A stretch of 64,000 bases of DNA, from IMG/VR virus record IMGVR_UViG_3300020473_001965, positions 124,001 to 188,000 of that record; one strand, written 5' to 3'. The notes beneath the pieces are model-generated. The model made no database searches and was not told where the DNA came from. It saw nothing but the letters and a program-made list of their open reading frames with translations. The translations under genes and the position numbers were made by a program. Below, one piece after another: positions 2,252-50,929 of this stretch (positions are counted from its first letter, which is position 1; each line of letters starts with the position of its first letter).

Positions 2252-2851
2252 TTAGTCCTTTCTATTAGCCCTATTGATATATCTATGCATTTCCCAACAT
2301 CTTGGCTCGTAGAGGTCGGAGCCTCCAACAGCAATCTCGTCCAAGTCTTCTTGCTTTCTGTGGGTATAAAATGCATCTCTTCCCGTAATAGGACAGACAG
2401 CAGGACATATCTCAATTTTGGTTGCCCAGGGCATTATATCTCGAACTTCTTCAAAAATATTCCCTGAGGCTGACATCTGCAAGGAGCTTACCACTATTGT
2501 ATAACCTTGTTGAAAAATTTCTATTAAAGCTTTCGCCACACCTGGAATCATAAAGGCTTCATCTACAGCCACTACATCGGGTTTTTCTGATGCATCTTTT
2601 ATATATTTTAACACATCTTCACCCTTGTTTACACAAATCGCGTCCAGCCTTCCGCCTGAGTGAGTTACGATAGCATTGTTGTCATATCTATCGTCGATCA
2701 AGGGCTTGAATGCTACTATCTTCTTATTTTGATACCTGTATCTATCAATTGTAGCAAGCATTCTGGTTGTCTTGGATCCGAACATGGGACCTGCAAAAAT
2801 AATGAACTTTGGATCATTAGTCATTTCTTTCTCGTGCTTATTGTTTCTCAT
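2252..2851 (-). CDS. tdk: Thymidine kinase (type II)
   Basis: GPMFGSKTT P-loop, FKP..D.RY, VAVDEAF, lasso region AVGGSDLYEPRC. Start is probably 2851 or 2824 rather than 2905. Confidence 0.9.
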   Translation of the reverse strand: MRNNKHEKEMTNDPKFIIFAGPMFGSKTTRMLATIDRYRYQNKKIVAFKPLIDDRYDNNAIVTHSGGRLDAICVNKGEDVLKYIKDASEKPDVVAVDEAFMIPGVAKALIEIFQQGYTIVVSSLQMSASGNIFEEVRDIMPWATKIEICPAVCPITGRDAFYTHRKQEDLDEIAVGGSDLYEPRCWEMHRYINRANRKD

Positions 2852-3263
2852 CACAGCGACCGTAGTCGTCTTCGATTCGTACGCAGTTGCTTCTAAGATT
2901 ATCACCTACTTCAATTATTTCACAGTCTTCAAGCGCCTCAATTCGGTATGGGCAACCGCTTTGAACGTGAAGAACGTCTCCTGCACTCATTTCTTGTGTC
3001 TGGATTGGGTTAAGATCCCCCGGCTCTTTCAACGAATATTCATTTCCAAACGTTGCTAAAGCTCTTCCTTTTAACAAAAACAGTGTTTCATTTTTTTGTG
3101 TGTTATATTTGAAGCTAGTTCTAAAACCTGCGTTTATTAATAGCGTCTTTCCGTGTACACCAGTAAACCCTGACCATACTATCTCTTGACCCCAGGGTTT
3201 CTCAACACTTGTACCCTTGGTTACCCATGCGGTTTTCTTGTGTTTTCTAGACATAAACATCAT
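2838..3263 (-). CDS. Cupin, mannose-6-phosphate isomerase type II (ManC C-terminal)-like
   Basis: VEKPWGQE N-terminus and RIEDDYGR C-terminus. The usual metal-binding His positions appear substituted. Confidence 0.7.
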   Translation of the reverse strand: MMFMSRKHKKTAWVTKGTSVEKPWGQEIVWSGFTGVHGKTLLINAGFRTSFKYNTQKNETLFLLKGRALATFGNEYSLKEPGDLNPIQTQEMSAGDVLHVQSGCPYRIEALEDCEIIEVGDNLRSNCVRIEDDYGRCDEKQ

Positions 3264-4300
3264 TCACCTCCGTGCAAAATGTGGGGTGTACCTTCGTATG
3301 ATCCGGCTGCAGTCTGAATGCCCCACTTCGCAACAACGGGTATTTCGCTCAAATTATGTGCATTCATATAAGACATGCTACTTTGGATTCCTGACTTCAA
3401 ATCCTTGATGATCGTCTGAGCGCTGGGCTTTACAGGCACTGAAGTTCTTACGCCCTCACCTACTGGCATATCTGCTCTGTCCCTATTTTTTCTGTCTATC
3501 ATGGCAGATGTAGAAGCCATGCCTCGAAATATCTTTACAGGCCCTGTTGGAGTTTGAACTACCGATCCTGGTGTTTCCGGAGCGCCAGAAAAAACACTCC
3601 CTAGCATGACATAATCTGCGCCGGCGGCTAATGCTTTTGCAATATCGCCTGAAGATCTTAAGCCTCCATCTGCGATGATTTTTACGCCCAATGAGTCAGC
3701 TACATCACAGCATTTAATCAAGCATGAGAACATCGGGACACCGTGTCCTGTGATCACCCTTGTTGAGCAACAAGATCCTCCACCGATACCTACTTTAATG
3801 CAATCGGCGCCCCAGTCTGCTAAATCTTTAACTGCCTCTGGTGTGGCTACGTTTCCTGCTACTATGTAGATGTCACTACCGTATGTGTTTCTCATTACCT
3901 TGAGTGTGTGACGCATCATGGTGCTATGCCCGTGTGCTATGTCGACTATAAAGTTTCTAGCGCCTGACTCATAAAGTGCTCGTGTTCTTTCAAAATCAGA
4001 CTCGCTGGCACCTACAGAAACAAAACAATCTTTTTCAGCAGCTCGGACTTGAAGATAATCGTCTACCGCACCTTGGATTGAATTAAATCGATGAAGGGCA
4101 CCTACTCCACCCGCGCTAGCAATAGCAACAGCCATCTCGGGCCCTGTAACAGTGTCCATATTTGCAGATAGAATAGGAACGCCCAAATCGATTGTTCCAA
4201 TAGTAGATGACGTGTCGAGTGATGATCTTGACGTACAGTCAGTCATTTGTGGTATCAGAAACACATCATTAAAAGTATAATAGGTCTCACCAGTCGGCAT
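3260..4300 (-). CDS. IMP dehydrogenase/GMP reductase family TIM barrel (no CBS domains; GMP-reductase-like)
   Basis: TFNDVFLIP, SANMDTVT, VDIAHGH, GNVAT, KVGIGGGSCCSTR (catalytic Cys), IADGG, FRGMAS, GEG. The ATG at 4300 overlaps the upstream TGA. Confidence 0.9.
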   Translation of the reverse strand: MPTGETYYTFNDVFLIPQMTDCTSRSSLDTSSTIGTIDLGVPILSANMDTVTGPEMAVAIASAGGVGALHRFNSIQGAVDDYLQVRAAEKDCFVSVGASESDFERTRALYESGARNFIVDIAHGHSTMMRHTLKVMRNTYGSDIYIVAGNVATPEAVKDLADWGADCIKVGIGGGSCCSTRVITGHGVPMFSCLIKCCDVADSLGVKIIADGGLRSSGDIAKALAAGADYVMLGSVFSGAPETPGSVVQTPTGPVKIFRGMASTSAMIDRKNRDRADMPVGEGVRTSVPVKPSAQTIIKDLKSGIQSSMSYMNAHNLSEIPVVAKWGIQTAAGSYEGTPHILHGGE

Positions 4301-5307
4301 CAATCTAGCTCCCACCAATCAATAGTCCTCTCAAGACCTTCCCAAAATCTTACAGTGGGCTCGTAACCGAGATCATTTTTAATCTCAGAAATGTCTGCTT
4401 GAGTGTGCATTACGTCCCCTGGCCTCCAGGGAGCATCTTGAACTACTACATGAGAAAATCGATTCTTGAAATACTCTAAGATTTCTTTGTTTGTAGTCCT
4501 GTCTCCGCAAGCAACGTTGTAACACTTACCCATAAACTTCATTGAAGCGTTTGCAGCTAAAACATTTGCATCTACAACGTTGTCAACATAACACATGTCT
4601 CTAGACTGTGTTCCGTCGCCGTCAGACCTCAGGGGTTTCATAAACTTAGTATTGTTACACCAGGCTGATACTGCAGTCGAATACGGCGAGTCTCCATACT
4701 GCCCCGGACCAAACACATTAAAGTATCGTAAACAAACAATATCTAGATTGTAGAGATCTCCAAATAATTTTGCCACATCTTCGATGGCACTCTTTTGCCA
4801 AGCGTAAGGTGATTTTGGATCTTTTGACTCCGCCTCTGTTGTAGGAAGAGTATCAGCGCCTCCGTACACTGAAGACGATGATGCCCAAACAACTCTGTCA
4901 ACAGCATTTCTAGAAGCTTCAAATAGAGCAACTGTCTTTGTTATATTGACGTCAGTAGTTTCAGTCGGATGCTCAACAGAATATGACACTCTAGGAACAG
5001 CGGCTTGATGAAATACTACATCGTACTCTCCTGATGCTACTAGCGATAATACTCTTTGATTAGCAAAATCATCTTGAATGACGAGAACCGTTCTGTCTGT
5101 AAAGGAACTGCTGTCTTTGGCTGCTAGCAAAAAAGAATCATAAAGCCCTGCATCTGGTACAGTTCTAAAGTCTAGGCCATCTAAAAGCTCAAGATGACCG
5201 TTTGACATATCGTCCACTATGGTAACAGACCATCCTTCTTTTACAAGCCTCTTGGCTAAGTTGCTCCCGATGAAACCGCAACCTCCCGTAACTAAAGCTT
5301 TTTTCAT
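4300..5307 (-). CDS. NAD-dependent NDP-sugar epimerase/dehydratase (extended SDR, WbpP/GalE-like)
   Basis: TGGCGFIG, HQAA, ASSSSVYG, SPYAWQK (YxxxK), LRYFNVFGP, RDMCYV, RPGDVMHT. Confidence 0.92.
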   Translation of the reverse strand: MKKALVTGGCGFIGSNLAKRLVKEGWSVTIVDDMSNGHLELLDGLDFRTVPDAGLYDSFLLAAKDSSSFTDRTVLVIQDDFANQRVLSLVASGEYDVVFHQAAVPRVSYSVEHPTETTDVNITKTVALFEASRNAVDRVVWASSSSVYGGADTLPTTEAESKDPKSPYAWQKSAIEDVAKLFGDLYNLDIVCLRYFNVFGPGQYGDSPYSTAVSAWCNNTKFMKPLRSDGDGTQSRDMCYVDNVVDANVLAANASMKFMGKCYNVACGDRTTNKEILEYFKNRFSHVVVQDAPWRPGDVMHTQADISEIKNDLGYEPTVRFWEGLERTIDWWELD

Positions 5308-5326
5308 TGTTATCTCCTCTCCTATT

Positions 5327-6238
5327 CTACACCAAAATATGGGCAGAGTTTAAGTTAAAGCGCATTCTAACATCAACTTCTTTAGGAATTAAATTTAATT
5401 CTTTATAGACAGCATTTGTCAAAAAGTACAAAAAATTTAGATCGTATCTAAAAGTCTTTGCAACCTCAGACGACCTTAATACAAAATGCATGTCAAGCGT
5501 TGAGTCCCTATAAGAGGCATGAATTAGAGAAATACATGTATCATCTGTATATATAAACCGCCTTGATGTTACATGCTCTACTCTATTATACTCATTTTCT
5601 CCGCGTAACTCTCTTCTAATCTTTGTAATCATTGAAGAATAAATTTTCTTATAATAATCTTTTTCGTGCTCATAATCCATGACAGAAGGATCTACATCCT
5701 CAAAGGTCCCATCATCATAAAGTGTCATAGACAAGGGTGTAGCTTCATGACTAGGAGAGTTAGCAGCAAAAGTCTTGACAAAGTCTGCAATTAAATCTAA
5801 GTTGCCGTTTTCGATTGCTTCTATCTCGTTCTTTACGAGGCTTACATTGTAATCTAACTCTGATCCTCTTAAAACAGTGACATTAGGAAAGTGACAAAGC
5901 CTGTTAGCATGATTTTCAAAATCCTTATAGAGACCCTTGATATCTTCAAGAGATTGTATCTCATCTCCACGCATACTGTATCTTAAAATCACATCTTGAA
6001 AGTCTGGAAGCAGAATTACAAATCTATTGTTTAAGTTTAAGATTTCTCGAGACATACCATACTCATGATGTTTTGTGTCTCTCTCATATTGCGCAGCGTG
6101 AACAAGCATGGAAAGATATGACCTGTCTTGTATGTTCCACTTGTAGCTGGAATCCTTATGAAGCGAATTATAGAAAGTTGTTTTTCCTGAAAGGTCTGGG
6201 CCTTCGAGAATTATATAGTTTGTCGGAAATCTTGTCAT
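5327..6238 (-). CDS. Fusion of a dNMP (thymidylate)-kinase-like P-loop domain and a minimal thymidylate-synthase/dCMP-hydroxymethylase-fold domain
   Basis: N-terminus: ILEGPDLSGKTT and QDRSYLS (TMK motifs). C-terminus: SRRF..C..(LDMHFVL)RSSE......YD...SAH, which aligns with TS R126/R127, C146, R166/S167, position 177 and H207. Confidence 0.75.
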   Translation of the reverse strand: MTRFPTNYIILEGPDLSGKTTFYNSLHKDSSYKWNIQDRSYLSMLVHAAQYERDTKHHEYGMSREILNLNNRFVILLPDFQDVILRYSMRGDEIQSLEDIKGLYKDFENHANRLCHFPNVTVLRGSELDYNVSLVKNEIEAIENGNLDLIADFVKTFAANSPSHEATPLSMTLYDDGTFEDVDPSVMDYEHEKDYYKKIYSSMITKIRRELRGENEYNRVEHVTSRRFIYTDDTCISLIHASYRDSTLDMHFVLRSSEVAKTFRYDLNFLYFLTNAVYKELNLIPKEVDVRMRFNLNSAHILV

Positions 6239-9200
6239 GATACCACCGGTTTCATCTTGGCCCCTGATGTCGATGCTCCCCAGTCAGGATCATTGGTTAC
6301 ATCAGCCAGCCATATTGTAAAAGGTTCTGCTTCTTGGGGTAGGAATCCCCAGACTCTTAACCAAGAAAGATTATTTTGATCATCACAAACACGAAGCCTG
6401 AAAAATGTCTTGCCCTTCTTGGTCTTCTTTTTTATTATTTCCTGGATACAAAACCAGACTACAGTTCGCGTGCTCCCCTCAAGAGAGGTCAATCTAGGAA
6501 TGTCTGCTTTTTCGATCTTGTCAAGTATGTTACCCGGATAGAGAAGATCTCTTGGAACTGTTGACGTCAAGTCGTAATGCATTGCGAGTTTTTCTGAACG
6601 TGTCCAATCGTCGACATACTCAGTCTTTGAAATCAGTTCTGGCAATATTGGCGGCGCGCTAGACTTCATTGCTTTTCGAAGCGTCATTCCATACATGCTT
6701 TTCCGTAAAATCTCGTAGTTTTCAATGATTATCTCATAAAGCTGCCTGTGATTATTGATTCTGCCGGTGGCAAAATCTTCCAAAGATGAAAAAGCATTAA
6801 TCTTGCAAAGAGAAGAGAAACACGTCTTGTTCATTTTGGAATGCTTCCATTTACCTTCGTCGTCATACAATAGATTGTGCAAGCTCGTGTACGGTCTTGT
6901 TGCCATTATTTCTTGAACAGCGTTAATACCCACACCCTTGACAGACGTCAAAGGCGGCACGAAAGCATTGCGATCATCAGAGTATGCCCACTCGTCGCCA
7001 GAATAGTTGATATCAGCAGGAGCAAACTTATAACCCATTTGTTTGATCTCTGCAATAGTTTTTTCTAGACCCTTTGGATTGTTATTTTCTGACTGAAGGA
7101 TTGTTGCCAACCAAGACTTTTCATGGTATGTATGCAACCAAGCAGCGTAGTAAGAATCAATAGCATAAGCTACAGCGTGCGACTTATTGAAACCGTAAAC
7201 ACTGAAGAACTCAATCCTATCAAAGAGTTTGTGCATTTTATCTTCGGGCAAACCGTGTAGTTGATTAGCTCCTTCGACAAACTTTTTACGTAGTGCATCT
7301 CGTTCCGCGCCTTTCTTACCAATCGTGTCAAGTGACTTCTTAACAAGAGTCTTGCGCATCTTATCAGATTCACCCGGAGAAAAACCTGCCAACTTTTGTG
7401 CAAGAAGCATAAACTGCTCTTGGAATGTAATGTGGCCGAATGTTGTACCAAGAATCTCTTCAATAATCGGGTGATCATACTCAATCTTGCTAGCATTTTT
7501 CTTGTCCCGAACGTACTTTTTATGAACATTTGCCCGCAGTGGTCCAGGGCGGTAAATCGCTGTCAGAGCAGCCAGCTCTTCAATTGATGTAGGCTTTGCT
7601 GCTTCGCAGAACTTTCTAGCACCCTCAGCAGTAAATTGAAAGACGCCAGTCTTTCTTCGCTGATGATAAACATGCTTCCATACCTTTTCATCGTCCTGTG
7701 TAACAAACCTACAATTTAAGTGCTTGTCAAAATAATCTCTAATATCGATAAAAGTCGGATCTTCATTGCCTTCACTCTTTAGGATCCGTCGAATGCAATT
7801 TTCAACGTCTTTCAAGAGTGTCAACCCCAAGAAGTCAAACTTGATAAAACCATTGTCTTCAAGATTTCGGAAGTTCATCCCTTCAGTCCAGGGTGTTTGC
7901 AACTCACCGCGAACTGAGACTAGAGGCATTGTCTTTTCAAGGTCTTCGGCAGGTGCTATAATCACGCCGCCGGCGTGGCGACCGATTGAACGATTTTGCA
8001 TAAAGAGTGCTTCAATATGATCTTTTACCTTAGGGTAGTTGTTCATGAAATCCCGATAGCGCTTAGAATACTTCATACAATCTTCATGCTGGAGAACAAA
8101 AACAGACTTCTCGGTGTTTTCGTCGCGAGCCTGTGCCATTACCTCATCTTGAAGTGGCCCGGTCATCTTATTGACCTCTCCGAAATCAACACCGTAAAAC
8201 TTTGAAATGTCCTTAACGAGAGATTTAAGCTTCAAAGTATTGAAATTGGAAACAGGGATTACTGCTTCGTCACCGTATAGTTCACGGGCTGCATCAATAA
8301 GGGCATCTCTGTCGCCTGCATCGGAATCAATATCTGGCCAAGATGTTCTATGTCTTCCAAGGAATCGGTCCCAAAGTAGGCCATACGGAATAGGATCAAG
8401 CTGGGTTATCCCTAGCAAGTAATTTACAAGACTGCCGCCGCCAGAGCCACGGGCTGGGCCAAAGAGAGTTCTATCTTCTGCTTTGTGGAAAACCTGATAC
8501 ATCGTCAAGAAATAGTTTTCAAAACCTAGATACTTGATATCTGACATTTCTGTTTTAGTACGCTCGACGTATTCAGGCTTTAAGTGAAGCCCTGTGTCTA
8601 CGAGCCCTTGTTTTACAAGATCTAGTAGCTGATCAAAGGCAGACTTTTCAGGAGTGTTAAAGTTTGGAAGCTTAACTGACTGGTCGATCCAGACGTCTTC
8701 ACACATTTCCCATGCAATATCATGTGTACGTTCGATGGCATCTGAAATTGTTTGGTCGTGCCCTTTATAAAAATCGTACTTGTCGCGGTGCAATGTATAC
8801 TCATCCCACATCTGCTCAGCATTCTTCGGATAAAGCTCACATTTTAGGTTGTCAAACTCGGGCAGCGGTGAGGGGTTATCTCTCATCCACCCTAAACGCT
8901 TATACAACTCTCGTGCCTCCCACTTATTCGGATTATAATAATGAGAATCGGCTGTGGCCACCAGTGGGACACCTGTCGAATCATGCAGGCTTAGAAGGTG
9001 TTTGTTAACTGTGTGTTGCGCGTCCAGTTTATTGAATTGCAGCTCAAGAAAGAAGTTTTCATTACCTACACATTGAGTAAATCTATCCGTCAGGTTTTGA
9101 AGTTCCATCTGGATTTCAGCTTCTGATTTCTTTAGAGCTGTTCCGCGGAGAATGCGATTAGAATAAATCCCGCCTAAACATGCTGTGCTTACAACAAGGC

Positions 9201-9765
9201 CTTCGCCATGCTCTTGAAGCATATTAAAATCGATTCGTGGGAATCGATAGAATCCATGTTTATAAGCCTTCTTGATCAATGTAAAAAGATTACCAAGGCC
9301 CACTTGGTTTTTAGCGATAACAACCAAGTGATATCTACGCTTCCACTCATCTTTGAGGACATCAATTGTCTTTGTTTCGTCCTCGTCTTCAATGGTGTGC
9401 CCGGTAGCTTTGACATCATCATCAGCGTCGATGTCTGTCACCTCTAAAGCCTTTGCCTCAGACTTGGCGTCTCGGACGGCTTGCCGGTGAGCCTCGTAAT
9501 CGTTCCTCCAGTCAGTCAAAGAAGGTACGAAATAAAACTCACAGCCATAAAGCTGTCGATAATTGCGTCCAGCCTTTTGCAATTTTTCTGTATGTTTCCG
9601 AGCGTGCGCCAATCCTGATCCGTTACCGTGATCAGTTAGGGCCCAGGCATCCATGCCGTTCTCCAAAACAAAATCGATATGATCAGCGGGATAACCCAAG
9701 CCGTCAAAGACCGAAAAACCTGTGTGTGCGTGTAATCCTACAAACCGCTTTGGCTTGATTATCAT
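6235..9765 (-). CDS. dnaE: DNA polymerase III alpha subunit (family C) with PHP domain
   Basis: LHAHTGFS..DG, LTDHG, TADSHY (PHP); GPARGSGGGS, PDIDSD, GRHAGG, KFDFLGL, GVFQF, YRPGP, YGFNKSHA. Confidence 0.95.
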   Translation of the reverse strand: MIIKPKRFVGLHAHTGFSVFDGLGYPADHIDFVLENGMDAWALTDHGNGSGLAHARKHTEKLQKAGRNYRQLYGCEFYFVPSLTDWRNDYEAHRQAVRDAKSEAKALEVTDIDADDDVKATGHTIEDEDETKTIDVLKDEWKRRYHLVVIAKNQVGLGNLFTLIKKAYKHGFYRFPRIDFNMLQEHGEGLVVSTACLGGIYSNRILRGTALKKSEAEIQMELQNLTDRFTQCVGNENFFLELQFNKLDAQHTVNKHLLSLHDSTGVPLVATADSHYYNPNKWEARELYKRLGWMRDNPSPLPEFDNLKCELYPKNAEQMWDEYTLHRDKYDFYKGHDQTISDAIERTHDIAWEMCEDVWIDQSVKLPNFNTPEKSAFDQLLDLVKQGLVDTGLHLKPEYVERTKTEMSDIKYLGFENYFLTMYQVFHKAEDRTLFGPARGSGGGSLVNYLLGITQLDPIPYGLLWDRFLGRHRTSWPDIDSDAGDRDALIDAARELYGDEAVIPVSNFNTLKLKSLVKDISKFYGVDFGEVNKMTGPLQDEVMAQARDENTEKSVFVLQHEDCMKYSKRYRDFMNNYPKVKDHIEALFMQNRSIGRHAGGVIIAPAEDLEKTMPLVSVRGELQTPWTEGMNFRNLEDNGFIKFDFLGLTLLKDVENCIRRILKSEGNEDPTFIDIRDYFDKHLNCRFVTQDDEKVWKHVYHQRRKTGVFQFTAEGARKFCEAAKPTSIEELAALTAIYRPGPLRANVHKKYVRDKKNASKIEYDHPIIEEILGTTFGHITFQEQFMLLAQKLAGFSPGESDKMRKTLVKKSLDTIGKKGAERDALRKKFVEGANQLHGLPEDKMHKLFDRIEFFSVYGFNKSHAVAYAIDSYYAAWLHTYHEKSWLATILQSENNNPKGLEKTIAEIKQMGYKFAPADINYSGDEWAYSDDRNAFVPPLTSVKGVGINAVQEIMATRPYTSLHNLLYDDEGKWKHSKMNKTCFSSLCKINAFSSLEDFATGRINNHRQLYEIIIENYEILRKSMYGMTLRKAMKSSAPPILPELISKTEYVDDWTRSEKLAMHYDLTSTVPRDLLYPGNILDKIEKADIPRLTSLEGSTRTVVWFCIQEIIKKKTKKGKTFFRLRVCDDQNNLSWLRVWGFLPQEAEPFTIWLADVTNDPDWGASTSGAKMKPVVS

Positions 9766-9838: not shown

Positions 9839-10618
9839 TCAAGGACCAGAGTTATATTTCTTGACTAATGAATCGTAGAACTTTTTTTCAGGCCCTGTTT
9901 TTCCATTCCAAGGTTTCTTACTTCCTACAAAATGAAAAATTGCATTGCCCGATCTATGATAGTTGGCGTTAGAGTTGTAAATGTAAGGTGCATATAAAAC
10001 ATTGATTTTGTTTTCTACGAAAAATTGTCGCAAAAAAGGCTGATCGTCTGGAATACGTGATGCTTCTGAAATCTGTTTGCGAAGTTTTTGAAATTCTTTT
10101 GTCTTGAAAAACTCAGACTTGAACAAAAGAACGCCCGTATTTACGCCTCCAAAACTAGGATCGGTTGTCTCATACCACACTTTACTTTTTGCCTTTTGCT
10201 CAACACCAGAAATCAAGGCTTCAGAAGCTCGAAACTCACTTAGCCATCTATCGACATCTGTGTGGACGATTACGTCTGCATCGATATACATCATGTAGTC
10301 CGCTGAATGAATAGATGACTTTGTAAACGCGTCGAACCACCAGACATATTTGTCTGATTTCGAAGCTTTGGGTTTAAAGAACTTAGCACGAATTCCTAGC
10401 GACCTGATCTTTGCTTTTTGACTTTCCGTTATGTCGGGTGAAAAAACATAAAAATATAGCATTGCTGCTGTGTTTTTTGACAGAGAAAGAATTGTATTGA
10501 CAGCACCTGGATAGTGATTTTGATCAAAAGCTAGGATCGCACTGACCGCCGGCGTGGTTTGAGTGTCAAATACGCTCGTAAATCCATGATCATATCTTAA
10601 TTCTAACCATGTCGACAT
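9839..10618 (-). CDS. Glycosyltransferase family 8-like
   Basis: AFDQNH, YIDADVIV (DxD), NTGVLL, DDQPFL, YN, FHFVGSKKPW. Confidence 0.82.
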   Translation of the reverse strand: MSTWLELRYDHGFTSVFDTQTTPAVSAILAFDQNHYPGAVNTILSLSKNTAAMLYFYVFSPDITESQKAKIRSLGIRAKFFKPKASKSDKYVWWFDAFTKSSIHSADYMMYIDADVIVHTDVDRWLSEFRASEALISGVEQKAKSKVWYETTDPSFGGVNTGVLLFKSEFFKTKEFQKLRKQISEASRIPDDQPFLRQFFVENKINVLYAPYIYNSNANYHRSGNAIFHFVGSKKPWNGKTGPEKKFYDSLVKKYNSGP

Positions 10619-10620
10619 TG

Positions 10621-10929
10621 CTATTGTTCTGAGTTATATCTTGATCTCGCATCCAAAAGAAGTTTTATTGACTCATACAAGCCCTTGTCTGAATTTCGAT
10701 CTGCCGTATACAGTGTATAAATTCTATCAACGAGTGTTACCATCTCTCCAAACGCTTCTGAGTTACTTAAAGACTTAAACTTCTTGTCAAAAGCTTTCTC
10801 TCTTTTTTCTAACTCTTTTGTTCTCTCGTTAAGACTTGCCACGTCTTGATCGTACTGATCGCAGCGCTCCTTCAGGTCACGCTCCATCGCTACAAGTTTT
10901 TCAATTTTCTGTTTTTCGGTTTCTGCCAT
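10621..10929 (-). CDS. Hypothetical coiled-coil protein
   Basis: Heptad-like charged helix; tightly packed with its neighbours. Confidence 0.6.
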   Translation of the reverse strand: MAETEKQKIEKLVAMERDLKERCDQYDQDVASLNERTKELEKREKAFDKKFKSLSNSEAFGEMVTLVDRIYTLYTADRNSDKGLYESIKLLLDARSRYNSEQ

Positions 10930-10932
10930 GTT

Positions 10933-11214
10933 CTAATCCTCCGTATCTCCAAAAAGAACTCTAACTCTATCAAAAAATGTCACTTCAAATCCGGGTGGAA
11001 GAAACATTTCTTGTCCAGACATTGTAATCACAGAAAGAGGTTCTGTTAACACGACCTTCTCTGAATGAGGTTCTGGAAAAATATCGTATATGTGTATCTT
11101 GCCTTCTAAAACATTTTCAATTCTAAGAATGAGCTCCTTAGCATGTACTTCATACGTGAAATAAAAAGTCAGCCTGGTCTTCTCATTTTCTGCAAAGTAC
11201 CTGTAGATGTCCAT
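10933..11214 (-). CDS. Hypothetical protein
   Basis: ORF packed between neighbours on the coding strand. Confidence 0.55.
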   Translation of the reverse strand: MDIYRYFAENEKTRLTFYFTYEVHAKELILRIENVLEGKIHIYDIFPEPHSEKVVLTEPLSVITMSGQEMFLPPGFEVTFFDRVRVLFGDTED

Positions 11215-11218
11215 TCAC

Positions 11219-12601
11219 TCACTTTATTCCTAGTCTAGATGACCACTTAACCCTTATGCGGTCAATCATGGCTTCTATATCCTTTGCAACAAATCCTTTG
11301 GCTGCAGCCCTGTCTCTTATTGTACTCATGTCAACTGATAATAGTTCAGACGGATCCTGGCCGGTTCTTCTAGCTCTTCCTAAAATTCCTGCGCTGTGTC
11401 CGCGGACTTCTGCGTCGCAACCATAGTATTTTTCAATATTTTTTATGCTGTCCCACCGTGTTGTTGGATCTCCACAGTCATCACTTGATAGAGTTTCTGT
11501 ATCGTCGCAACTATGTTGAATTTCATGAGATAACGCATCTGCTAACTCGGCGGACAGCCAGTCTTGAAAACCTTCAATTGTCGGATATGATCTTGGAATA
11601 TCTAGTGTCAACACAAGATTAGACTTTGATCGATCTTCAATCACACAGACGTAAGCAGCCTCTACGTTGGCAGAGCCGTCATCGGTGACTGCTATGCCTA
11701 AGTGTACTTCATTGATGTTTTTAAATTCGTCAAATATGCTTGTGGGTAAAACAAGCGTCGCTTCAACTCCAGCCGATAATTTTTGAAGCTCATCAAACGT
11801 GCTTCTCGTAAAAAGAAAAGAAAATATGGCGTCTTCTAAATCATCAACGTATTGAGTCATATCAGGATCACCTGATGCTGCTTCTATCAAAAGGCCTCTT
11901 ACATACTCTCTTATGATTGATTCGTTCATAGCATCCTTTCCCCATGACGAATGAGAAAGCCATGCACGCTGTGTTTCTTCAGCTTCTTTTCGTGTCATCT
12001 TTCGCGCCTTTACCTGATTATCTAAATATATCGACATCAACTCTTTTACTGGTCGGCCAGTAGCATATGATTCTCCCCGGAAGCCAACGACAAATGCTGG
12101 AACCTCACAAGACGAAGTAAAATAATGAAACGCACTCTTTGAAGATGAGTTCGTCAAAGGGCAAGAAACTCTTTGAAAAGGTTGATCTTTCTGAGTCAGG
12201 TGGTGCATCTCATGTGGCACAACATTGTACAACTCGATTCTTAGTTTTTCAAGTACTTCAGAATCACCTAGTTTTTCTGGTGACAACTGAATGTCTATGT
12301 CGATTCTTGCTTCGGAGCTCTCAGTGAAACCTGCCTCACCATCGATATTCCACCCTGGATGACCTTCATCAAACTGATCAGTTCTTACTTTTACTTCTAT
12401 CTCATACAGGGCATACCCGACATCTTCCCACAAATCAAACCAAACGTCAGGGTCGATTGGGTAGTCCCAGACATATTGAAACGTTTTTTGACCTGGCTTT
12501 TTTAGCTTTGAAATAAAGCTCAGAATGTCTTTGATGACAGGGGCTGCAGCGTCTTGATAAAAGAAATCTTCTTGATCGAGACCTATTACTCGAGATTCCA
12601 T
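11219..12601 (-). CDS. Protein with two tandem HExxH (zincin-like) domains
   Basis: HEMHH..Q...CEVPA in domain 1 and HEIQH...AEVRG in domain 2, joined by MNESIIREYVRGLLIE. Likely start ATG at 12601 (GAGGG RBS). Confidence 0.65.
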   Translation of the reverse strand: MESRVIGLDQEDFFYQDAAAPVIKDILSFISKLKKPGQKTFQYVWDYPIDPDVWFDLWEDVGYALYEIEVKVRTDQFDEGHPGWNIDGEAGFTESSEARIDIDIQLSPEKLGDSEVLEKLRIELYNVVPHEMHHLTQKDQPFQRVSCPLTNSSSKSAFHYFTSSCEVPAFVVGFRGESYATGRPVKELMSIYLDNQVKARKMTRKEAEETQRAWLSHSSWGKDAMNESIIREYVRGLLIEAASGDPDMTQYVDDLEDAIFSFLFTRSTFDELQKLSAGVEATLVLPTSIFDEFKNINEVHLGIAVTDDGSANVEAAYVCVIEDRSKSNLVLTLDIPRSYPTIEGFQDWLSAELADALSHEIQHSCDDTETLSSDDCGDPTTRWDSIKNIEKYYGCDAEVRGHSAGILGRARRTGQDPSELLSVDMSTIRDRAAAKGFVAKDIEAMIDRIRVKWSSRLGIK

Positions 12602-12636
12602 AACTGCACCCTCACATAGCAATAAATATCACGCTA

Positions 12637-13611
12637 CTAGTAATAATCTGTCAGGTCAACACCCTTTTCTTTTGCGTCATTAAGGTGAATCAGGGGGTCA
12701 TAAGTGCCTGAATCGGACGTGATTGTTCGCAAACTTGAAGCGATCCCAGACTCCAAAGTAATGTAAGGTCGCCACCCTGAGGCTTCTCTAAACTTTGCAC
12801 TAGACAGAATATGATTGCCCAGATAATCCGTTTCAGGGTGCCACTTGATTATGCTGGAAACATCTTTCCCCACTATGCTTGAAAGCATCTCAACAATGCC
12901 CCCGGTGTTATAAGGCGTTTCAGCAGCTACATTATAATCAGCTCCAAACATACCCTTGACACAACTCATGAAGACTGCATTACAAAAATCAGAGACATGC
13001 ATGTAGTCCTTAGTCTTGTTAGGATTTAAAAACATGTCAAGCGAATTAACGTCATTAAGAGCTGAGTATATTGTCTTTGCTATCAAAGAGTTCATGTCGC
13101 CGGCGCCGCCGTATGCAAAAAGAGGTCGCATAATCACCCAGTCTCGAGCTGTGCTTCTTACGATCTGTTCTCCGGCTAGCTTCTGAACGCCATAAAAAGT
13201 TCTAGGGTTTAGGTCTGAATCCTCGAAGATTGGTCTGTCTTGATACTTTTCTGTATCATAGATTACTGTGGTACCCATATAACAAACTGGGACGTTTGCT
13301 TTTCTTGCCGCCCTTGCAATATTATGTGTCCCCATCACGTTACTAAGAGAAGAATCCTCAGCATTCAGTGCGACGACATCTGTTCCAACAACAGCGGCGT
13401 TATGAACGATTACATCGATACCTCTATTTGAAAGAACACTCGACCATACATCTTCAGTGTTTCCCCACACACAAGGTTCGTTTGTCTTGTGTCGTCTAAC
13501 AGCCAGATCCTCATCATCCATTAGTGAAACAAATTCATGATCAGTCGTTTGTATCAATCTCCCTAGATTGTCTCCGATGAATCCGCGTTCGCCTGTAATT
13601 GCAATTTTCAT
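12637..13611 (-). CDS. NAD-dependent NDP-sugar epimerase/dehydratase/reductase (second extended SDR)
   Basis: ITGERGFIG, HNAA, NVMGT, YGVQK, KDYMHV.D. The ATG at 13611 overlaps the upstream TGA. Confidence 0.85.
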   Translation of the reverse strand: MKIAITGERGFIGDNLGRLIQTTDHEFVSLMDDEDLAVRRHKTNEPCVWGNTEDVWSSVLSNRGIDVIVHNAAVVGTDVVALNAEDSSLSNVMGTHNIARAARKANVPVCYMGTTVIYDTEKYQDRPIFEDSDLNPRTFYGVQKLAGEQIVRSTARDWVIMRPLFAYGGAGDMNSLIAKTIYSALNDVNSLDMFLNPNKTKDYMHVSDFCNAVFMSCVKGMFGADYNVAAETPYNTGGIVEMLSSIVGKDVSSIIKWHPETDYLGNHILSSAKFREASGWRPYITLESGIASSLRTITSDSGTYDPLIHLNDAKEKGVDLTDYY

Positions 13612-13871
13612 ATACTTGAAATCCTCTCTATGATTGCCAAAGACCACGTATTAGAATTTGGGCTTGGCACATAATCGTATAGCACATGAGGTGCTACTTC
13701 ATCATACGTGTCTAGCTCAAAATTTTCTATTAGATAGACGATTCCTTTTGTGGCCTTGCTGGCTTTTTTGTTTGAGTAATCTTTTTCACATGCCTCTTTG
13801 GCAAGATCTAGATGTGAATACACACCTATTGATTCATTCTTTTCTAAGATAACTCTGCTGACTAAAAACAT
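13608..13871 (-). CDS. Hypothetical protein
   Basis: ORF with AGGG RBS, translationally coupled to the downstream SDR; IGVYS..LA motif common in small phage proteins. Confidence 0.55.
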   Translation of the reverse strand: MFLVSRVILEKNESIGVYSHLDLAKEACEKDYSNKKASKATKGIVYLIENFELDTYDEVAPHVLYDYVPSPNSNTWSLAIIERISSI

Positions 13872-13913
13872 TTGTGTTCCCTTGTTTAAAGATACTCAGC
13901 AATTCTATTTTTT

Positions 13914-14477
13914 TTAAGTTAATCTAAATTCTTTTAAAATATTTTTAATGTACGAAAATAGCAAGCCTTCATTTACAAGATGCGACACAACTTTAACATT
14001 ATCGCTTTTTAGTTGTTCAATCGCAACAATGTTATTTGGACTATCTTCCCAGAGATATACTACGTCGGCATTTAGTTTCTCAACATATTCAAGAGCCTTG
14101 ACATACTTGGCTCGAGGATCGGAACTTCCTACTGCTTCGATTTTTGGCATAGGATTGACGCCATAATCAGAAAGAAACTTTGCAACAGGAGCTGGATTCG
14201 CCCTTGCAGTCAATACTATAACTCTTTCCGACCCATGCTGTTTTAAAGCACTTTCCATTTTTGACCATACAGACTTAATAATAGAAGCGTCAGGTGGATA
14301 GACATCAAACTCAGCAAAGTCAAGAACATCACCTGGCTGACTTAGAGATCGTTCATAATCTCTATACTGTCTAGAGGTTACGTACTCTGTCTCACCTGAC
14401 TTTCTATTAATGATCACTTTAGCGCCTGAGTCTACTAAGGTGTCATCAAAATCAAATATGTAAAATGGGCTTTCCAT
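13914..14477 (-). CDS. HAD-superfamily phosphatase
   Basis: IFDFDDTL (motif I), VLTAR (II), K (III), WEDSPNN (IV). Confidence 0.8.
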   Translation of the reverse strand: MESPFYIFDFDDTLVDSGAKVIINRKSGETEYVTSRQYRDYERSLSQPGDVLDFAEFDVYPPDASIIKSVWSKMESALKQHGSERVIVLTARANPAPVAKFLSDYGVNPMPKIEAVGSSDPRAKYVKALEYVEKLNADVVYLWEDSPNNIVAIEQLKSDNVKVVSHLVNEGLLFSYIKNILKEFRLT

Positions 14478-14522
14478 GAAATAACTACTTACCAAAAGAT
14501 AAGTATGTATTTGATTGATTAT

Positions 14523-16765: not shown

Positions 16766-16773
16766 TTTTTCTC

Positions 16774-50900: not shown

Positions 50901-50929
50901 AAAATAACACGCATAAAGAAAATGTTCAA
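50901..50929 (-). promoter_or_regulatory. sigma70-like promoter, possibly leaderless, for the polA-like gene
   Basis: TTGAAC-N17-TATTTT, 5 nt before the GTG start. Confidence 0.55.

What the first reader, a model, noticed from the sequence alone, without database searches (positions are those of the whole stretch)
5327..6238. dNMP kinase fused to a stripped-down TS fold carrying the cytosine-specific Asp177
Counting from R166 (E. coli TS numbering), the sequence reads R-S-S-E-V-A-K-T-F-R-Y-D. This places Asp at position 177, where dUMP-specific enzymes have Asn and dCMP hydroxymethylases have Asp (established). The phosphate-binding SRR, nucleophilic Cys and His207 are retained. The loop before the Cys is about 10 aa shorter, D169 is Glu, Y209 is lost and the chain ends right after SAH, so the C-terminal lid and recognisable N-terminal folate contacts are absent. 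Inference: the enzyme activates dCMP C5 covalently for a non-folate electrophile or oxidant and channels the product into the fused kinase.
Basis: partly seen in the sequence, partly recalled or inferred. Interest (0 to 1): 0.82.

Follow-up and report, generated by a model that had tools for sequence, protein, structure and literature searches.

The report
Kinase fused to minimal dCMP-modifying TS fold
An uncultivated 236-kb marine phage encodes a nucleotide kinase fused to the smallest thymidylate-synthase-type domain found here, set up to bind dCMP, which suggests that this abundant phage group makes a modified cytosine for its DNA.

Summary
Window 5327..6238 (-) is one intact 303-aa ORF with two domains.

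- **N-terminal domain (residues 1-145):** a YorR/thymidylate-kinase-like P-loop kinase.
- **C-terminal domain (residues 146-303):** a confident thymidylate synthase (TS) fold (AlphaFold pLDDT 97.7).
- **Catalytic set kept:** SRR, Cys235, Arg255-Ser256, His300 and Asp266. Asp266 sits at the Asn177 position and is invariant in 80/80 relatives.
- **Parts missing:** the R21 equivalent, the folate-holding small domain (W80, Y94), 10-16 residues of the loop before the Cys, and everything after SAH.

The nearest solved structure is not TS. It is AfhB, the flavin/O2-dependent dCMP 5-hydroxylase of phage HY126 (Foldseek E=7e-8), followed by T4 dCMP hydroxymethylase. In RB69, DLP3 and RL38J1, which make 5-hydroxy-dCMP, a YorR/TMK-like kinase lies one to three genes from the synthase. 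Here the two are fused.

The family is large, with about 600 clusters at 90% identity and 130 IMG/VR contigs. It is found only in uncultivated marine phages, has no Pfam match, and follows a PolIII-alpha gene in nearly all of 80 sampled loci.

My best reading is a bifunctional dCMP C5-modifying enzyme plus kinase, with hydroxylation as the leading chemistry. The chemistry is not settled. The diagnostic D169N is Glu in this protein and switches among N, D and E within the family. It is a new variant of a known kind.

The parts
5327..6238 (-). Whole gene: 303-aa two-domain protein (stop codon at 5327-5329)
   Evidence: Single ORF with no internal stop. Full-length AlphaFold model pLDDT 97.6, pTM 0.92. 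About 600 homologues, nearly all around 300 aa with both domains.
5804..6238 (-). N-terminal P-loop nucleotide kinase domain (residues 1-145), YorR / thymidylate-kinase-like
   Evidence: Family profile vs PDB: YorR 2axp/3kb2 E=3e-12, thymidylate kinases E=3e-4 to 3e-3. phrog_761 'thymidylate kinase' E=1.4e-11. hhalign to RB69p045 kinase 93.8%, E=1.7e-7 over 130 columns. BFVD thymidylate-kinase hits.
6176..6205 (-). Walker A / P-loop EGPDLSGKTT (residues 12-21)
   Evidence: Translation. G18 and K19 invariant; E12, G13 and D15 in at least 90% of 80 sequences. The 'GPD' form is shared with YorR and RB69p045.
6119..6127 (-). DRS motif (D38-R39-S40), counterpart of the DR(Y/H/F) motif of thymidylate kinases
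   Evidence: Translation. R39 invariant, D38 in at least 90%. Aligned to the DRF of YorR and of A. aeolicus TMK.
5963..5971 (-). R90-G91-D92 of the lid region (R86...RGDE)
   Evidence: Translation. R86 invariant; R90, G91 and D92 in at least 90%. Same RGDE as in YorR.
5330..5803 (-). C-terminal minimal thymidylate-synthase-fold domain (residues 146-303)
   Evidence: AlphaFold of the domain alone pLDDT 97.7. Foldseek PDB: AfhB 9iqu E=6.7e-8 TMq 0.65; 9iqc 2.2e-7; T4 dCMP hydroxymethylase about 2.5e-5; then thymidylate synthases. hhalign to the AfhB family 95.7%, E=1e-8. No Pfam hit.
5651..5665 (-). E192-K-D-Y195-Y196, counterpart of the E58-x-x-W-F helix B motif of TS
   Evidence: E192 77/80, Y195 75/80, Y196 74/80. 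MAFFT places it opposite ELLWF (ThyA), ELEWY (T4 gp42) and AEDFW (RB69 gp48). The profile alignment of this half alone is not significant.
5588..5602 (-). G213-E-N215-E-Y217: family-specific 8-residue insert just before SRR; possible stand-in for the deleted Y94 loop (inference)
   Evidence: G213 73/80, N215 70/80, Y217 62/80. Appears as an insertion relative to ThyA, gp42 and gp48.
5558..5566 (-). S225-R226-R227 = phosphate-binding R126/R127 of TS
5534..5536 (-). Cys235 = catalytic nucleophile C146 of TS
   Evidence: 77/80 conserved. Aligned to C146 of ThyA and to the Cys of gp42 and gp48.
5441..5476 (-). R255-S-S-E258-V-A-K-T-F-R-Y-D266 = R166...D169...N177 segment; Asp266 is the cytosine-specifying residue
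   Evidence: Translation. D266 80/80; position 258 is N40/D27/E9 in A2 and D36/N30/E14 in 80 IMG/VR loci. Alignment to ThyA.
5339..5347 (-). S298-A-H300 = H207 motif; 'SAH' is shared with AfhB/RB69 gp48; the protein ends 3 residues later
6235..9765 (-). Context: DnaE-type DNA polymerase III alpha gene; its TGA stop overlaps the ATG of the target (ATGA)
   Evidence: Pfam DNA_pol3_alpha, PHP and finger domains. Overlap read from the sequence. A PolIII-alpha ORF is present in all 80 related loci and lies upstream of the target in all but two (L058, L066); in about half nothing is inserted between them.
4300..5307 (-). Context: extended-SDR nucleotide-sugar epimerase/dehydratase-like gene 19 nt downstream, with its own GGAG-type ribosome-binding site
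   Evidence: Pfam Epimerase 5e-45. GalE/TviC-like, but below all NCBIfam cut-offs. Present in 69/80 loci, usually directly after the target.

Best explanation
The gene encodes a bifunctional enzyme of pre-replicative cytosine modification.

**C-terminal domain.** This minimal TS-fold domain binds dCMP. Asp266 reads the cytosine N3/N4 edge, and R226/R227, R255 and S256 hold the phosphate. Cys235 attacks C6, which makes C5 nucleophilic, and a small group is then added at C5. The leading candidate is a hydroxyl group from O2 through a loosely bound reduced flavin, as in AfhB/RB69 gp48 (5-hydroxy-dCMP synthase). A one-carbon unit from a folate or pterin is the second candidate.

**N-terminal domain.** This YorR/TMK-like kinase phosphorylates the modified dCMP to the diphosphate. 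A host NDP kinase would complete the triphosphate. The PolIII-alpha-type polymerase, whose gene overlaps the start of this one, would then incorporate it.

**Shown:** the fold, the conserved catalytic and nucleotide-binding residues, the fusion, the synteny, and the nearest structural relatives.

**Inferred:** substrate, cofactor, product, the order of the two reactions, any channelling between domains, and whether the kinase domain replaces the missing small domain and lid as a cover over the active site.
For: 1. TS fold at very high confidence, with AfhB (a dCMP hydroxylase solved with dCMP and FAD) as best PDB match for both the whole protein and the isolated domain. T4 dCMP hydroxymethylase is next and dUMP-specific TS after that. 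The best BFVD hit is the AfhB-family protein of phage Acj9.
2. All residues needed for covalent catalysis on a pyrimidine nucleotide are conserved across relatives with 23-82% identity to this protein. Asp at the N177 position is 80/80. [quoted passage not shown]
3. Further conserved residues lie outside the nucleotide site: E165, E192, Y195, Y196, E210, G213, N215, Y217, R244 and F269. These suggest a second-substrate pocket rather than a decaying domain.
4. Features shared with the dCMP enzymes but not with ThyA: E165 (= AfhB E43 and a Glu in T4 gp42), 'RD' after the Cys strand, a hydrophobic residue at Q165, an acidic residue three before the Cys (the L143 position), and 'SAH' shared with AfhB.
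5. In DLP3, RB69 and RL38J1, which have experimentally shown 5hodCMP synthases, a YorR/TMK-like 'nucleotide kinase' lies 1-3 genes away. The kinase domain here belongs to the same 'GPD' P-loop type.
6. The phage has its own ThyX (window 14975-15958) and dCMP deaminase. The TS-like domain is therefore not needed for dTMP synthesis.
7. The gene sits in a tight operon: ATGA overlap with the polymerase gene upstream and an SDR nucleotide-sugar-type gene downstream. This window also has a GT8 glycosyltransferase, a second SDR and a HAD hydrolase within 8 kb. That mix resembles known glycosyl-5hoC clusters.
Against: - No biochemical data exist for any member of the family.
- The residue proposed as the hydroxylase signature (D169N) is Glu in this protein. 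It is N in only 38-50% of relatives, D in 34-45% and E in 11-18%, with at least 10 switches on the tree and no co-varying pocket residue.
- By sequence, T4 dCMP hydroxymethylase (91%, E=9e-7) matches as well as RB69 gp48 (88%, E=3e-6).
- The domain lacks about 95 residues that AfhB keeps, including the FYGPR (Y94) loop and the post-SAH RD..Y..F segment. The R21 phosphate-binding Arg is also missing. A flavin site cannot be assumed.
- Glycosyltransferases are not conserved near the gene. The GT8 island is in 2 of 80 loci, and none of the 40 other neighbouring proteins scanned against Pfam is a glycosyltransferase.
- The window encodes Fpg/Nei and HhH-GPD glycosylase homologues. Their E. coli counterparts remove 5-hydroxycytosine (own knowledge), which is odd if the DNA carried free 5hoC.
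- No clear dCTPase was found. There is only a dUTPase_2 fragment.
- 3 of 80 relatives lack the Cys.
Confidence: 0.55

Rival explanations
1. Folate- or pterin-dependent one-carbon transfer. The domain would be a reduced dCMP hydroxymethylase or methyltransferase (T4 gp42-like chemistry) and the fused kinase would play the role of T4 gp1. The product would be 5-hydroxymethyl- or 5-methyl-dCDP.
For: - T4 gp42 is the best single-sequence hhalign match (91.4%, E=8.9e-7) and the second-best structural class.
- Position 169 is a carboxylate (E here; D in 34-45% of the family), as in ThyA and gp42, where Asp169 contacts the pterin (the role of D169 is own knowledge).
- There is an acidic residue at the L143 position, as in hydroxymethylases.
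- The phage already uses folate, because it has ThyX.
- A pterin-4a-carbinolamine dehydratase gene lies in the same block in 25 of 61 fully sampled loci.
Against: - Every element that holds folate in TS is absent: the small domain with W80/W83, Y94, and the C-terminal lid. T4 gp42 keeps the small domain and a long C-terminus.
- Foldseek ranks AfhB about 300-fold better in E-value than gp42.
- Position 169 is Asn in 38-50% of the family.
Confidence: 0.2
2. Plain dNMP (dTMP) kinase with a non-catalytic TS-derived nucleotide-binding module. The kinase would serve the dCMP to dUMP to dTMP to dTDP flux of this phage. The TS-like domain would only bind dCMP (or dUMP/dTMP) as a regulatory, oligomerisation or docking module.
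For: - The conserved neighbourhood is a pyrimidine/purine salvage and conversion block: dCMP deaminase, thymidine kinase, ThyX, DHH phosphoesterase, dUTPases and GMP reductase. No other thymidylate kinase was seen in the window.
- Sources annotate some members simply as thymidylate kinase.
- 3 of 80 members lack the Cys.
- The domain has lost R21, W80 and Y94.
Against: - The nucleophilic Cys, the R166/S167 pair, H207 and Asp177 are conserved at 96-100% across deep divergence. That is the pattern of a working active site.
- Additional conserved aromatic and acidic residues line what would be the cofactor side.
- The architecture has been kept for the whole breadth of the family: 212 clusters at 50% identity.
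Confidence: 0.13
3. Cofactor-free or otherwise unprecedented chemistry on the Cys-activated cytosine. Examples are hydrolytic deamination of the 5,6-dihydrocytosine adduct, or O2 activation by a tetrahydropterin recycled by the nearby carbinolamine dehydratase and an SDR. The fused kinase domain would act as the lid of the active site.
For: - The extreme reduction of the fold leaves no recognisable cofactor cradle.
- pTM 0.92 for the two-domain model implies a fixed inter-domain packing.
- In the syntenic block, a carbinolamine dehydratase is in 25/61 loci, an Fe/Mn-SOD-like protein in 61/80 and an SDR in 69/80.
- A carboxylate at position 169 is typical of pterin recognition (own knowledge).
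Against: - All of this is circumstantial.
- The dehydratase is absent within 10 kb in this phage.
- The SDR looks like a nucleotide-sugar enzyme (GalE/TviC-like), not a pteridine reductase.
- A zinc dCMP deaminase is already encoded in 65/80 loci.
Confidence: 0.08

Closest known systems
AfhB / RB69 gp48 / DLP3 gp80: flavin- and O2-dependent dCMP 5-hydroxylase (5hodCMP synthase) of the TS superfamily (PDB 9iqu, 9iqc; PMC13326640)
   Same: - Best structural match.
- Same catalytic Cys, RR, R-S and His, and Asp at position 177.
- Shared 'RD' and 'SAH' motifs, a Glu on strand 1, and a short C-terminus without the TS lid.
- Partnered with a YorR/TMK-like kinase.
   Different: - The target domain is about 158 aa against 217-238 aa.
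- It lacks the small domain (FW..GGTD...FYGPR), 16 residues of the pre-Cys loop, the R21 equivalent and the post-SAH segment.
- It is not recognised by Pfam PF00303, whereas all listed gp48 relatives are.
- Position 169 is Glu here and N/D/E in the family, instead of invariant Asn.
- The kinase is fused rather than a neighbouring gene.
- Flavin binding is untested.
T4 gp42 dCMP hydroxymethylase together with gp1 dNMP kinase
   Same: Cytosine-specific Asp, a carboxylate at position 169, an acidic residue near the L143 position, and sequence similarity comparable to that with gp48. The pathway logic is the same: modify dCMP, then phosphorylate it.
   Different: gp42 keeps the folate-binding parts and a long C-terminus. 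gp1 is an unrelated type of kinase, and it is the one shown to phosphorylate 5hodCMP in RB69. The two T4 proteins are separate.
Thymidylate synthase ThyA (PF00303)
   Same: Fold, nucleophile, phosphate-binding Arg/Ser and His207.
   Different: Asp instead of Asn177. No small domain, no Y94, no R21, no C-terminal lid. The match is weakest of the three references (75%, E=2.5e-5). The phage makes dTMP with ThyX instead.
B. subtilis SPbeta YorR (2axp/3kb2) and the cluster kinases DLP3_078, RB69p045 and RL38J1_214
   Same: The same 'GPD' P-loop variant, a DR-x-x-x-S motif, and (with YorR) the RGDE lid. All are associated with phage DNA metabolism.
   Different: Those are stand-alone proteins of 173-182 aa with untested substrates. 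RB69p045 lacks the RGDE lid.
Viral 437-aa thymidylate kinase / thymidylate synthase fusion proteins (ESM Atlas cluster; a lead only)
   Same: Both domain families (PF02223 and PF00303) occur in one phage protein. This is the nearest named cluster to the whole query (score 0.91).
   Different: The TS part is full size and is recognised by PF00303. Its specificity residue was not examined, because the sequences could not be fetched here.

Membership tests
Thymidylate synthase / dCMP hydroxymethylase superfamily (TS fold) | The TS alpha/beta fold | tested here: met
   Domain model pLDDT 97.7. 301 PDB matches at E<=0.001; the listed top 50 are all TS-fold enzymes. Best TMq 0.65.
Thymidylate synthase / dCMP hydroxymethylase superfamily (TS fold) | Catalytic Cys (C146) plus R166/S167 and the R126/R127 pair | tested here: met
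   C235, R255/S256 and R226/R227 aligned by hhalign to ThyA, gp42 and gp48. 95-99% conserved.
Thymidylate synthase / dCMP hydroxymethylase superfamily (TS fold) | Fourth phosphate-binding arginine (R21) | tested here: not met
   MAFFT puts Ser/Pro opposite R21 of ThyA and the Arg of gp48. That part of the alignment is not statistically supported.
Thymidylate synthase / dCMP hydroxymethylase superfamily (TS fold) | Match to Pfam PF00303 | tested here: not met
   No Pfam family at E<=10. Only phrog_160 'thymidylate synthase' at E=5.8e-5 over residues 234-301.
Thymidylate synthase / dCMP hydroxymethylase superfamily (TS fold) | Folate-binding small domain (W80, W83, Y94) and C-terminal lid | tested here: not met
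   About 50 residues between helix B and helix G are deleted, and the chain ends 3 residues after H300.
Thymidylate synthase / dCMP hydroxymethylase superfamily (TS fold) | Obligate homodimer with shared active sites | not testable with these tools
   Only monomer prediction was available, and no coordinates are returned.
5hodCMP synthase (AfhB / RB69 gp48 type) | Asp at the N177 position (dCMP substrate) | tested here: met
   D266, 80/80.
5hodCMP synthase (AfhB / RB69 gp48 type) | Asn at the D169 position (the signature proposed in PMC13326640) | tested here: not met
   E258 in this protein. Family counts are N40/D27/E9 and D36/N30/E14, with at least 10 changes on the tree. Asn186 is invariant in the gp48 family.
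5hodCMP synthase (AfhB / RB69 gp48 type) | Acidic residue at the L143 position | tested here: inconclusive
   D232 lies three residues before the Cys (family D32/S20/N11...), and D233 is more conserved (D49/N12/E5). The loop is 16 residues shorter, so positional equivalence is uncertain.
5hodCMP synthase (AfhB / RB69 gp48 type) | Binds a flavin and uses O2 | not testable with these tools
   Needs protein. The paper with the AfhB flavin contacts (He et al., ref. 49 of PMC13326640) is not in the library.
5hodCMP synthase (AfhB / RB69 gp48 type) | Sequence-family membership over the whole domain | tested here: inconclusive
   hhalign 95.7%, E=1e-8, but only over the 81 columns from SRR to SAH. 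The N-terminal halves do not align significantly (E=0.057, probability 1%).
5hodCMP synthase (AfhB / RB69 gp48 type) | Encoded with a TMK/YorR-like kinase, DNA glycosyltransferases and NDP-sugar genes | tested here: inconclusive
   Kinase: met, as a fusion. An SDR 'epimerase' is in 69/80 loci. A glycosyltransferase (GT8) is in only 2/80 loci within 10 kb.
T4 gp42-type dCMP hydroxymethylase | Asp at N177 and Asp at D169, with a folate site | tested here: inconclusive
   Asp at 177 is met. Position 169 is Glu here and Asp in 34-45% of relatives. The folate-holding segments that gp42 keeps are absent.
Thymidylate kinase / YorR-like P-loop dNMP kinases | Walker A GxxxxGK[ST], a DR-type motif and an Arg-rich lid | tested here: met
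   EGPDLSGKTT, D38-R39-S40 and R86...R90-G-D. YorR E=3e-12 and TMKs E about 1e-3.
Thymidylate kinase / YorR-like P-loop dNMP kinases | Match to curated models (PF02223, TIGR00041) | tested here: not met
   No Pfam hit. TIGR00041 scores 19 bits against a cut-off of 83. A few relatives carry precomputed PF02223 or PF13521 hits.
Thymidylate kinase / YorR-like P-loop dNMP kinases | Phosphorylates a (modified) dNMP rather than a nucleoside | not testable with these tools
   Deoxynucleoside kinases share the fold and motifs. One source calls a relative a deoxyadenosine/deoxycytidine kinase, and BFVD lists a 'deoxyguanosine kinase' hit.

The most novel reading that the evidence does not exclude
The about 155-residue domain is the smallest self-sufficient TS-fold catalyst. 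The fused kinase domain replaces the lost small domain and lid as the roof of the active site. The domain installs a cytosine C5 modification by a cofactor route not yet described for this superfamily, for example tetrahydropterin/O2 with the nearby carbinolamine dehydratase, or a flavin held at the domain interface. A globally distributed clade of uncultivated marine phages (contigs up to 284 kb in the 80 loci sampled) would then replicate, with a PolIII-alpha-type polymerase, DNA that carries a cytosine derivative nobody has yet measured.
Probability: 0.12. Interest if true: 0.9.

Novelty: new variant of a known kind. Interest (0 to 1): 0.7.

Why it matters
1. **A possible modified cytosine in an abundant phage clade.** The group is entirely uncultivated (130 IMG/VR contigs, about 600 protein clusters, contigs up to 284 kb). 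A modified cytosine would affect how these phages evade restriction and CRISPR systems, and how well they are recovered by sequencing.
2. **A test case for cofactor switching.** Members of the TS superfamily were only recently shown to have switched from folate to flavin/O2. A version lacking the whole cofactor-holding small domain is a sharp test of what the minimal catalytic core is and how the cofactor is held.
3. **A function for orphan kinases.** The fusion links the unexplained YorR/TMK-like 'nucleotide kinases' of the RB69, DLP3 and RL38J1 clusters to the synthase step, which suggests what they do.
4. **A limit on a proposed predictor.** The D169N rule for 5hodCMP synthases does not behave as a fixed trait in this family, so it cannot be applied blindly.
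5. **A blind spot in domain screens.** The family is invisible to Pfam- and NCBIfam-based annotation, so domain-driven screens for DNA-modification genes miss it.

Tried and rejected
- **Single-sequence searches.** Pfam and phmmer-vs-PDB found nothing useful for the TS part.
- **Cultured phages.** tblastn against 50,697 phage genomes gave no match for the whole protein. The C-terminal domain gave only E=6 hits to Aeromonas phage TS. The kinase domain gave insignificant hits. No isolate can be used as a model.
- **Stand-alone versions.** A profile search with the C-terminal domain alone returned only members of the same fused family and fragments. No bridging sequences were obtained.
- **N-terminal half of the TS-like domain.** Profile alignment to the N-terminal half of the AfhB family is topologically sensible but not significant (E=0.057, probability 1%). 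I use it only as a hint.
- **Literature.** The paper describing the AfhB crystal structure is not held. PMC13326640 has no supplements held. So the flavin contacts could not be mapped, and I could not check whether its nine IMG/VR test enzymes include this family. That is unlikely, because they were found with Pfam.
- **Glycosyltransferases near the gene.** The neighbouring gene families scanned turned out to be dUTPase, PRTase, amidase, ART, DUF2452, sulfotransferase, Hsp70, fatty-acid hydroxylase or unknown, not glycosyltransferases. The widespread 209-aa neighbour c7 stayed unidentified.
- **Two functional classes.** I looked for classes tied to the residue at position 169. Neither gene context nor co-varying positions separate N, D and E members.
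- **dTMP synthase.** Rejected because of the invariant Asp177, the missing folate site and the ThyX in the same block.
- **Chance motif match.** Rejected on the fold and profile statistics.
Full report
**1. What is at the coordinates.**
Window 5327..6238 on the minus strand is one uninterrupted ORF of 303 codons. The operators' remark about a stop does not apply here. The ATG overlaps the TGA of the upstream 1176-aa DnaE-type DNA polymerase III alpha gene (ATGA at 6235-6238). An SDR 'epimerase' gene starts 19 nt after the target's stop, behind a GGAG-rich ribosome-binding site. The window is part of IMG/VR contig UViG_3300020473_001965, 235.7 kb. It also carries ribonucleotide reductase, DnaB helicase, a UvsX-like recombinase, SSB, a head protease, an endolysin and a baseplate hub. 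So this is a large tailed phage.

**2.
- The family profile aligned to E. coli ThyA pairs the SRR with R126/R127, Cys235 with C146, R255/S256 with R166/S167, E258 with D169 and D266 with N177. H300 pairs with H207 in the multiple alignment A5.
- The same pairings come out against T4 gp42 and RB69 gp48 and in alignment A5.
- The spacer between RR and Cys is 7 residues. It is 18 in ThyA and 23 in gp42 and gp48.
- The protein ends three residues after H300.
- About 50 residues between helix B (E58 motif) and helix G are missing. That stretch is the small domain with W80, W83 and Y94.

**3. It is not a chance resemblance.**
- The protein has about 600 homologues at 90% clustering and 212 clusters at 50% identity. 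Nearly all are around 300 aa with both domains.
- In 80 sequences sharing 23-82% identity with this protein, Asp266 is invariant. Cys235, R226, R227, R255, S256, S298 and H300 are kept in 90-99%.
- AlphaFold gives pLDDT 97.6 and pTM 0.92 for the whole protein, and pLDDT 97.7 for residues 146-303 alone.
- Foldseek with the isolated domain finds 301 PDB chains at E<=0.001. The 50 listed are all TS-fold enzymes.
- Pfam and NCBIfam do not see the TS part at all. PHROGs sees it weakly (phrog_160, E=5.8e-5).

**4. Which TS-fold enzyme it resembles most.**

| Comparison | Reference | Result |
|---|---|---|
| Foldseek, isolated domain vs PDB | 9iqu, phage HY126 dCMP hydroxylase AfhB with dCMP | E=6.7e-8, TMq 0.65 |
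| Foldseek, isolated domain vs PDB | 9iqc, AfhB with dCMP and FAD | E=2.2e-7 |
| Foldseek, isolated domain vs PDB | T4 dCMP hydroxymethylase | E about 2.5e-5 |
| Foldseek, isolated domain vs PDB | dUMP-specific thymidylate synthases | after the above |
| hhalign, family profile vs AfhB/gp48 family profile | 81 columns, SRR to SAH | 95.7%, E=1e-8 |
| hhalign, family profile vs single sequence | T4 gp42 | 91%, E=9e-7 |
| hhalign, family profile vs single sequence | RB69 gp48 | 88%, E=3e-6 |
| hhalign, family profile vs single sequence | E. coli ThyA | 75%, E=2.5e-5 |

- The whole-protein model gives the same structural order.
- The best BFVD hit is the Acj9 protein, which is 62% identical to RB69 gp48.
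- The domain therefore belongs with the dCMP-specific branch. Structure favours AfhB and sequence does not decide.
- Features shared with the dCMP enzymes and not with ThyA are a Glu on the first strand (E165 = AfhB E43), 'RD' after the Cys strand, a hydrophobic residue at Q165 and an acidic residue near L143. 'SAH' is shared with AfhB specifically.

**5. What is known about those relatives.**
- Lee et al. (PMC13326640) showed that RB69 gp48, DLP3 gp80, RL38J1_216 and other TS homologues convert dCMP to 5-hydroxy-dCMP.
- These enzymes use O2 (18O2 labelling) and a loosely bound flavin. He et al. solved the HY126 enzyme with a flavin.
- The hydroxyl group is then glycosylated on DNA.
- Lee et al. 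propose N177D plus D169N as the signature.
- Their Table 1 lists a YorR/TMK-like 'nucleotide kinase' of untested function one to three genes from the synthase, in all three lineages.

**6. The kinase half.**
- Residues 1-145 carry EGPDLSGKTT, D38-R39-S40 and R86...R90-G-D.
- The family profile hits SPbeta YorR (2axp/3kb2) at E=3e-12 and thymidylate kinases at about 1e-3.
- It aligns over 130 columns with RB69p045 (93.8%, E=1.7e-7). The two share the unusual 'GPD' P-loop.
- The target thus fuses the two gene products that are neighbours in the known 5hoC phages.
- The ESM Atlas adds two leads. A viral 437-aa TMK-TS fusion cluster is the nearest named cluster. Viral clusters of 173- and 183-aa TS-like proteins also exist.

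**7. Anatomy of the reduction.**
- **Kept:** a linker helix (helix A position), strand 1, helix B with E192-x-x-Y-Y opposite E58-x-x-W-F, helix G, and the SRR strand. Also kept are the Cys strand, its partner strand ending in R255-S256, helix J starting at Asp266, the last strand and SAH.
- **Lost:** the R21 equivalent, the small domain (W80, Y94), 16 residues of the pre-Cys loop relative to gp48, and all residues after SAH.
- **Gained:** an 8-residue insert with a conserved G-x-N-E-Y just before SRR.
- Of the 12 ThyA residues within 6 Å of C5 listed by Lee et al., W80 and Y94 have no counterpart. The rest map to D232/D233, C235, I236, L254, S256, S257, E258, T262 and D266.
- The many conserved residues on the 'cofactor side' (E165, E192, Y195, Y196, E210, G213, N215, Y217, F269) argue for a second-substrate pocket.
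- The high pTM of the two-domain model suggests that the kinase domain packs rigidly against it. Whether it caps the site could not be checked, because coordinates are not returned.

**8. Position 169.**
- It is Glu in this protein.
- In the 80-sequence alignment it is N40/D27/E9. In 80 IMG/VR loci it is D36/N30/E14.
- A maximum-likelihood tree needs at least 10 changes among the three states.
- Neither gene neighbourhood nor any other alignment column separates the states cleanly.
- In the gp48 family the Asn is invariant.
- So the proposed hydroxylase signature is not met by this protein and is not a fixed trait of its family. Either the position is tolerant in this scaffold or close relatives differ in cofactor.

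**9. Genomic context.**
- 130 IMG/VR contigs encode a relative, and 80 were fetched. All 80 carry a PolIII-alpha ORF. It lies upstream of the target in all but two of them (L058, L066), and in about half nothing is inserted between them.
- Other neighbours: an SDR epimerase-like gene in 69 loci, thymidine kinase in 67 and dCMP deaminase in 65. An Fe/Mn-SOD-like protein is in 61, a DHH phosphoesterase in 58 and a nucleoside deoxyribosyltransferase-like protein in 39.
- Less frequent: ThyX in 31, a pterin-4a-carbinolamine dehydratase in 25 (of 61 fully sampled), GMP reductase in 24, a small cupin in 22 and a dUTPase_2-NT5C fusion in 19.
- This is a replication and nucleotide-conversion block. 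ThyX makes a second thymidylate synthase unnecessary.
- Glycosyltransferases are not conserved. The GT8 at 9839-10618, a 467-aa unknown, a second SDR and a HAD hydrolase form an island found in only two loci. The other neighbour families scanned are not glycosyltransferases.
- No cultured phage carries the family. The polymerase is at most 31% identical to any isolate's.

**10. Interpretation.**
- The best-supported reading is a bifunctional enzyme. It activates dCMP at C6 through Cys235, adds a small group at C5, and phosphorylates the product for incorporation by the co-encoded polymerase.
- Hydroxylation by flavin/O2 is the leading chemistry. The reasons are the nearest structure, the absence of folate-holding parts, the AfhB-like short C-terminus and SAH motif, and the kinase partnership.
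- I put the general statement at 0.55, and hydroxylation specifically at roughly 0.3.
- Arguments against are Glu258, the loss of segments that AfhB keeps, the missing R21, the lack of conserved glycosyltransferases and the lack of a clear dCTPase. Fpg/Nei and HhH-GPD glycosylase genes also lie in the window, and their bacterial homologues excise 5-hydroxycytosine (own knowledge).
- The rivals are:
  - folate/pterin-dependent hydroxymethylation or methylation (0.2);
  - a plain dNMP kinase with a non-catalytic TS-derived binding module (0.13);
  - cofactor-free or pterin/O2 chemistry (0.08).

**11. Novelty.**
The kind of system is known: a TS-superfamily dCMP modifier plus a kinase, feeding modified dCTP to a phage polymerase. 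The variant is new as far as the libraries at hand show. It is a fold cut to about 155 residues, fused to a YorR-like kinase, unrecognised by Pfam and NCBIfam, restricted to uncultivated marine phages, and with a variable residue at the supposed signature position. Sources call it 'hypothetical protein' or 'thymidylate kinase'.

Noticed in passing
window 6235-6238; window 5308-5326: The stop codon of the PolIII-alpha gene overlaps the start codon of the target (ATGA), which suggests translational coupling. The SDR gene follows after 19 nt, with a GGAGAGGAG ribosome-binding site.
   Followed up: yes
L007, L060, L076/L077, L045, L057, L069 (upstream of the target): The PolIII-alpha gene is split by inserted ORFs of 303-348 aa in several relatives. 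One type carries a DUF559/Vsr-like endonuclease domain, so these look like homing-endonuclease or intron/intein insertions.
   Followed up: partly
window 16774-17577 and 18295-18720: The phage encodes an Fpg/Nei-type DNA glycosylase and a short HhH-GPD protein. Bacterial homologues remove oxidised pyrimidines including 5-hydroxycytosine, which sits oddly with a 5hoC genome unless the base is further modified.
   Followed up: no
window 16009-16413 and 16379-16798: Only the C-terminal third of a dUTPase_2 (dimeric dUTPase/dCTPase-type) domain is found in one ORF. It overlaps a second ORF with no clear family, so this may be a split or frameshifted gene. In 19 related loci a 313-aa dUTPase_2-NT5C fusion occurs.
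   Followed up: partly
L002:18599-19279 (just outside the window's left end) and 60 other loci: A 227-aa protein with an Fe/Mn superoxide dismutase C-terminal domain is part of the conserved block (61/80 loci). It is followed by two conserved proteins of unknown function (about 209 aa in 58 loci; about 95 aa in 51 loci).
   Followed up: partly
for example L030:20496-20885; 25 of 61 loci with a full downstream flank: A pterin-4a-carbinolamine dehydratase gene lies 6-10 kb downstream of the target in many relatives, although no pterin-dependent hydroxylase was recognised. It is not present within 10 kb in this phage.
   Followed up: partly
window 3260-4318 and 2838-3263: A GMP reductase/IMPDH-family gene (24 loci) and a 141-aa cupin matching the PHROG 'cysteine dioxygenase' family (22 loci) sit between the SDR gene and thymidine kinase. 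With dCMP deaminase, TK and ThyX, this looks like a pool-shifting set that moves G/C nucleotides towards A/T.
   Followed up: no
window 9839-14495: An island of GT8 glycosyltransferase, two small ORFs, a 467-aa protein with no family, a second SDR (dTDP-glucose dehydratase-like) and a HAD hydrolase. It is found in only two of the 80 loci (L002, L003). It is a possible sugar-modification module of unknown target.
   Followed up: partly
L006:9243-9905 and five other loci: A 221-aa Sulfotransfer_2 protein lies directly between the polymerase gene and the target in L006 and elsewhere in the block in other loci. Fatty-acid-hydroxylase-like, Hsp70/DnaJ and ART-PolyVal genes also occur in the block.
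   Followed up: no
alignment A2: Three of 80 family members have Asn or Arg instead of the catalytic Cys and one or two lack R255 or H300, so some lineages may have lost catalysis.
   Followed up: no
window 26587-35313, 35314-39243, 50926-54378, 54674-57823, 58099-62730: There are five very large ORFs (1049-2908 aa) on the same strand. They were not analysed and are presumably virion or injection proteins.
   Followed up: no
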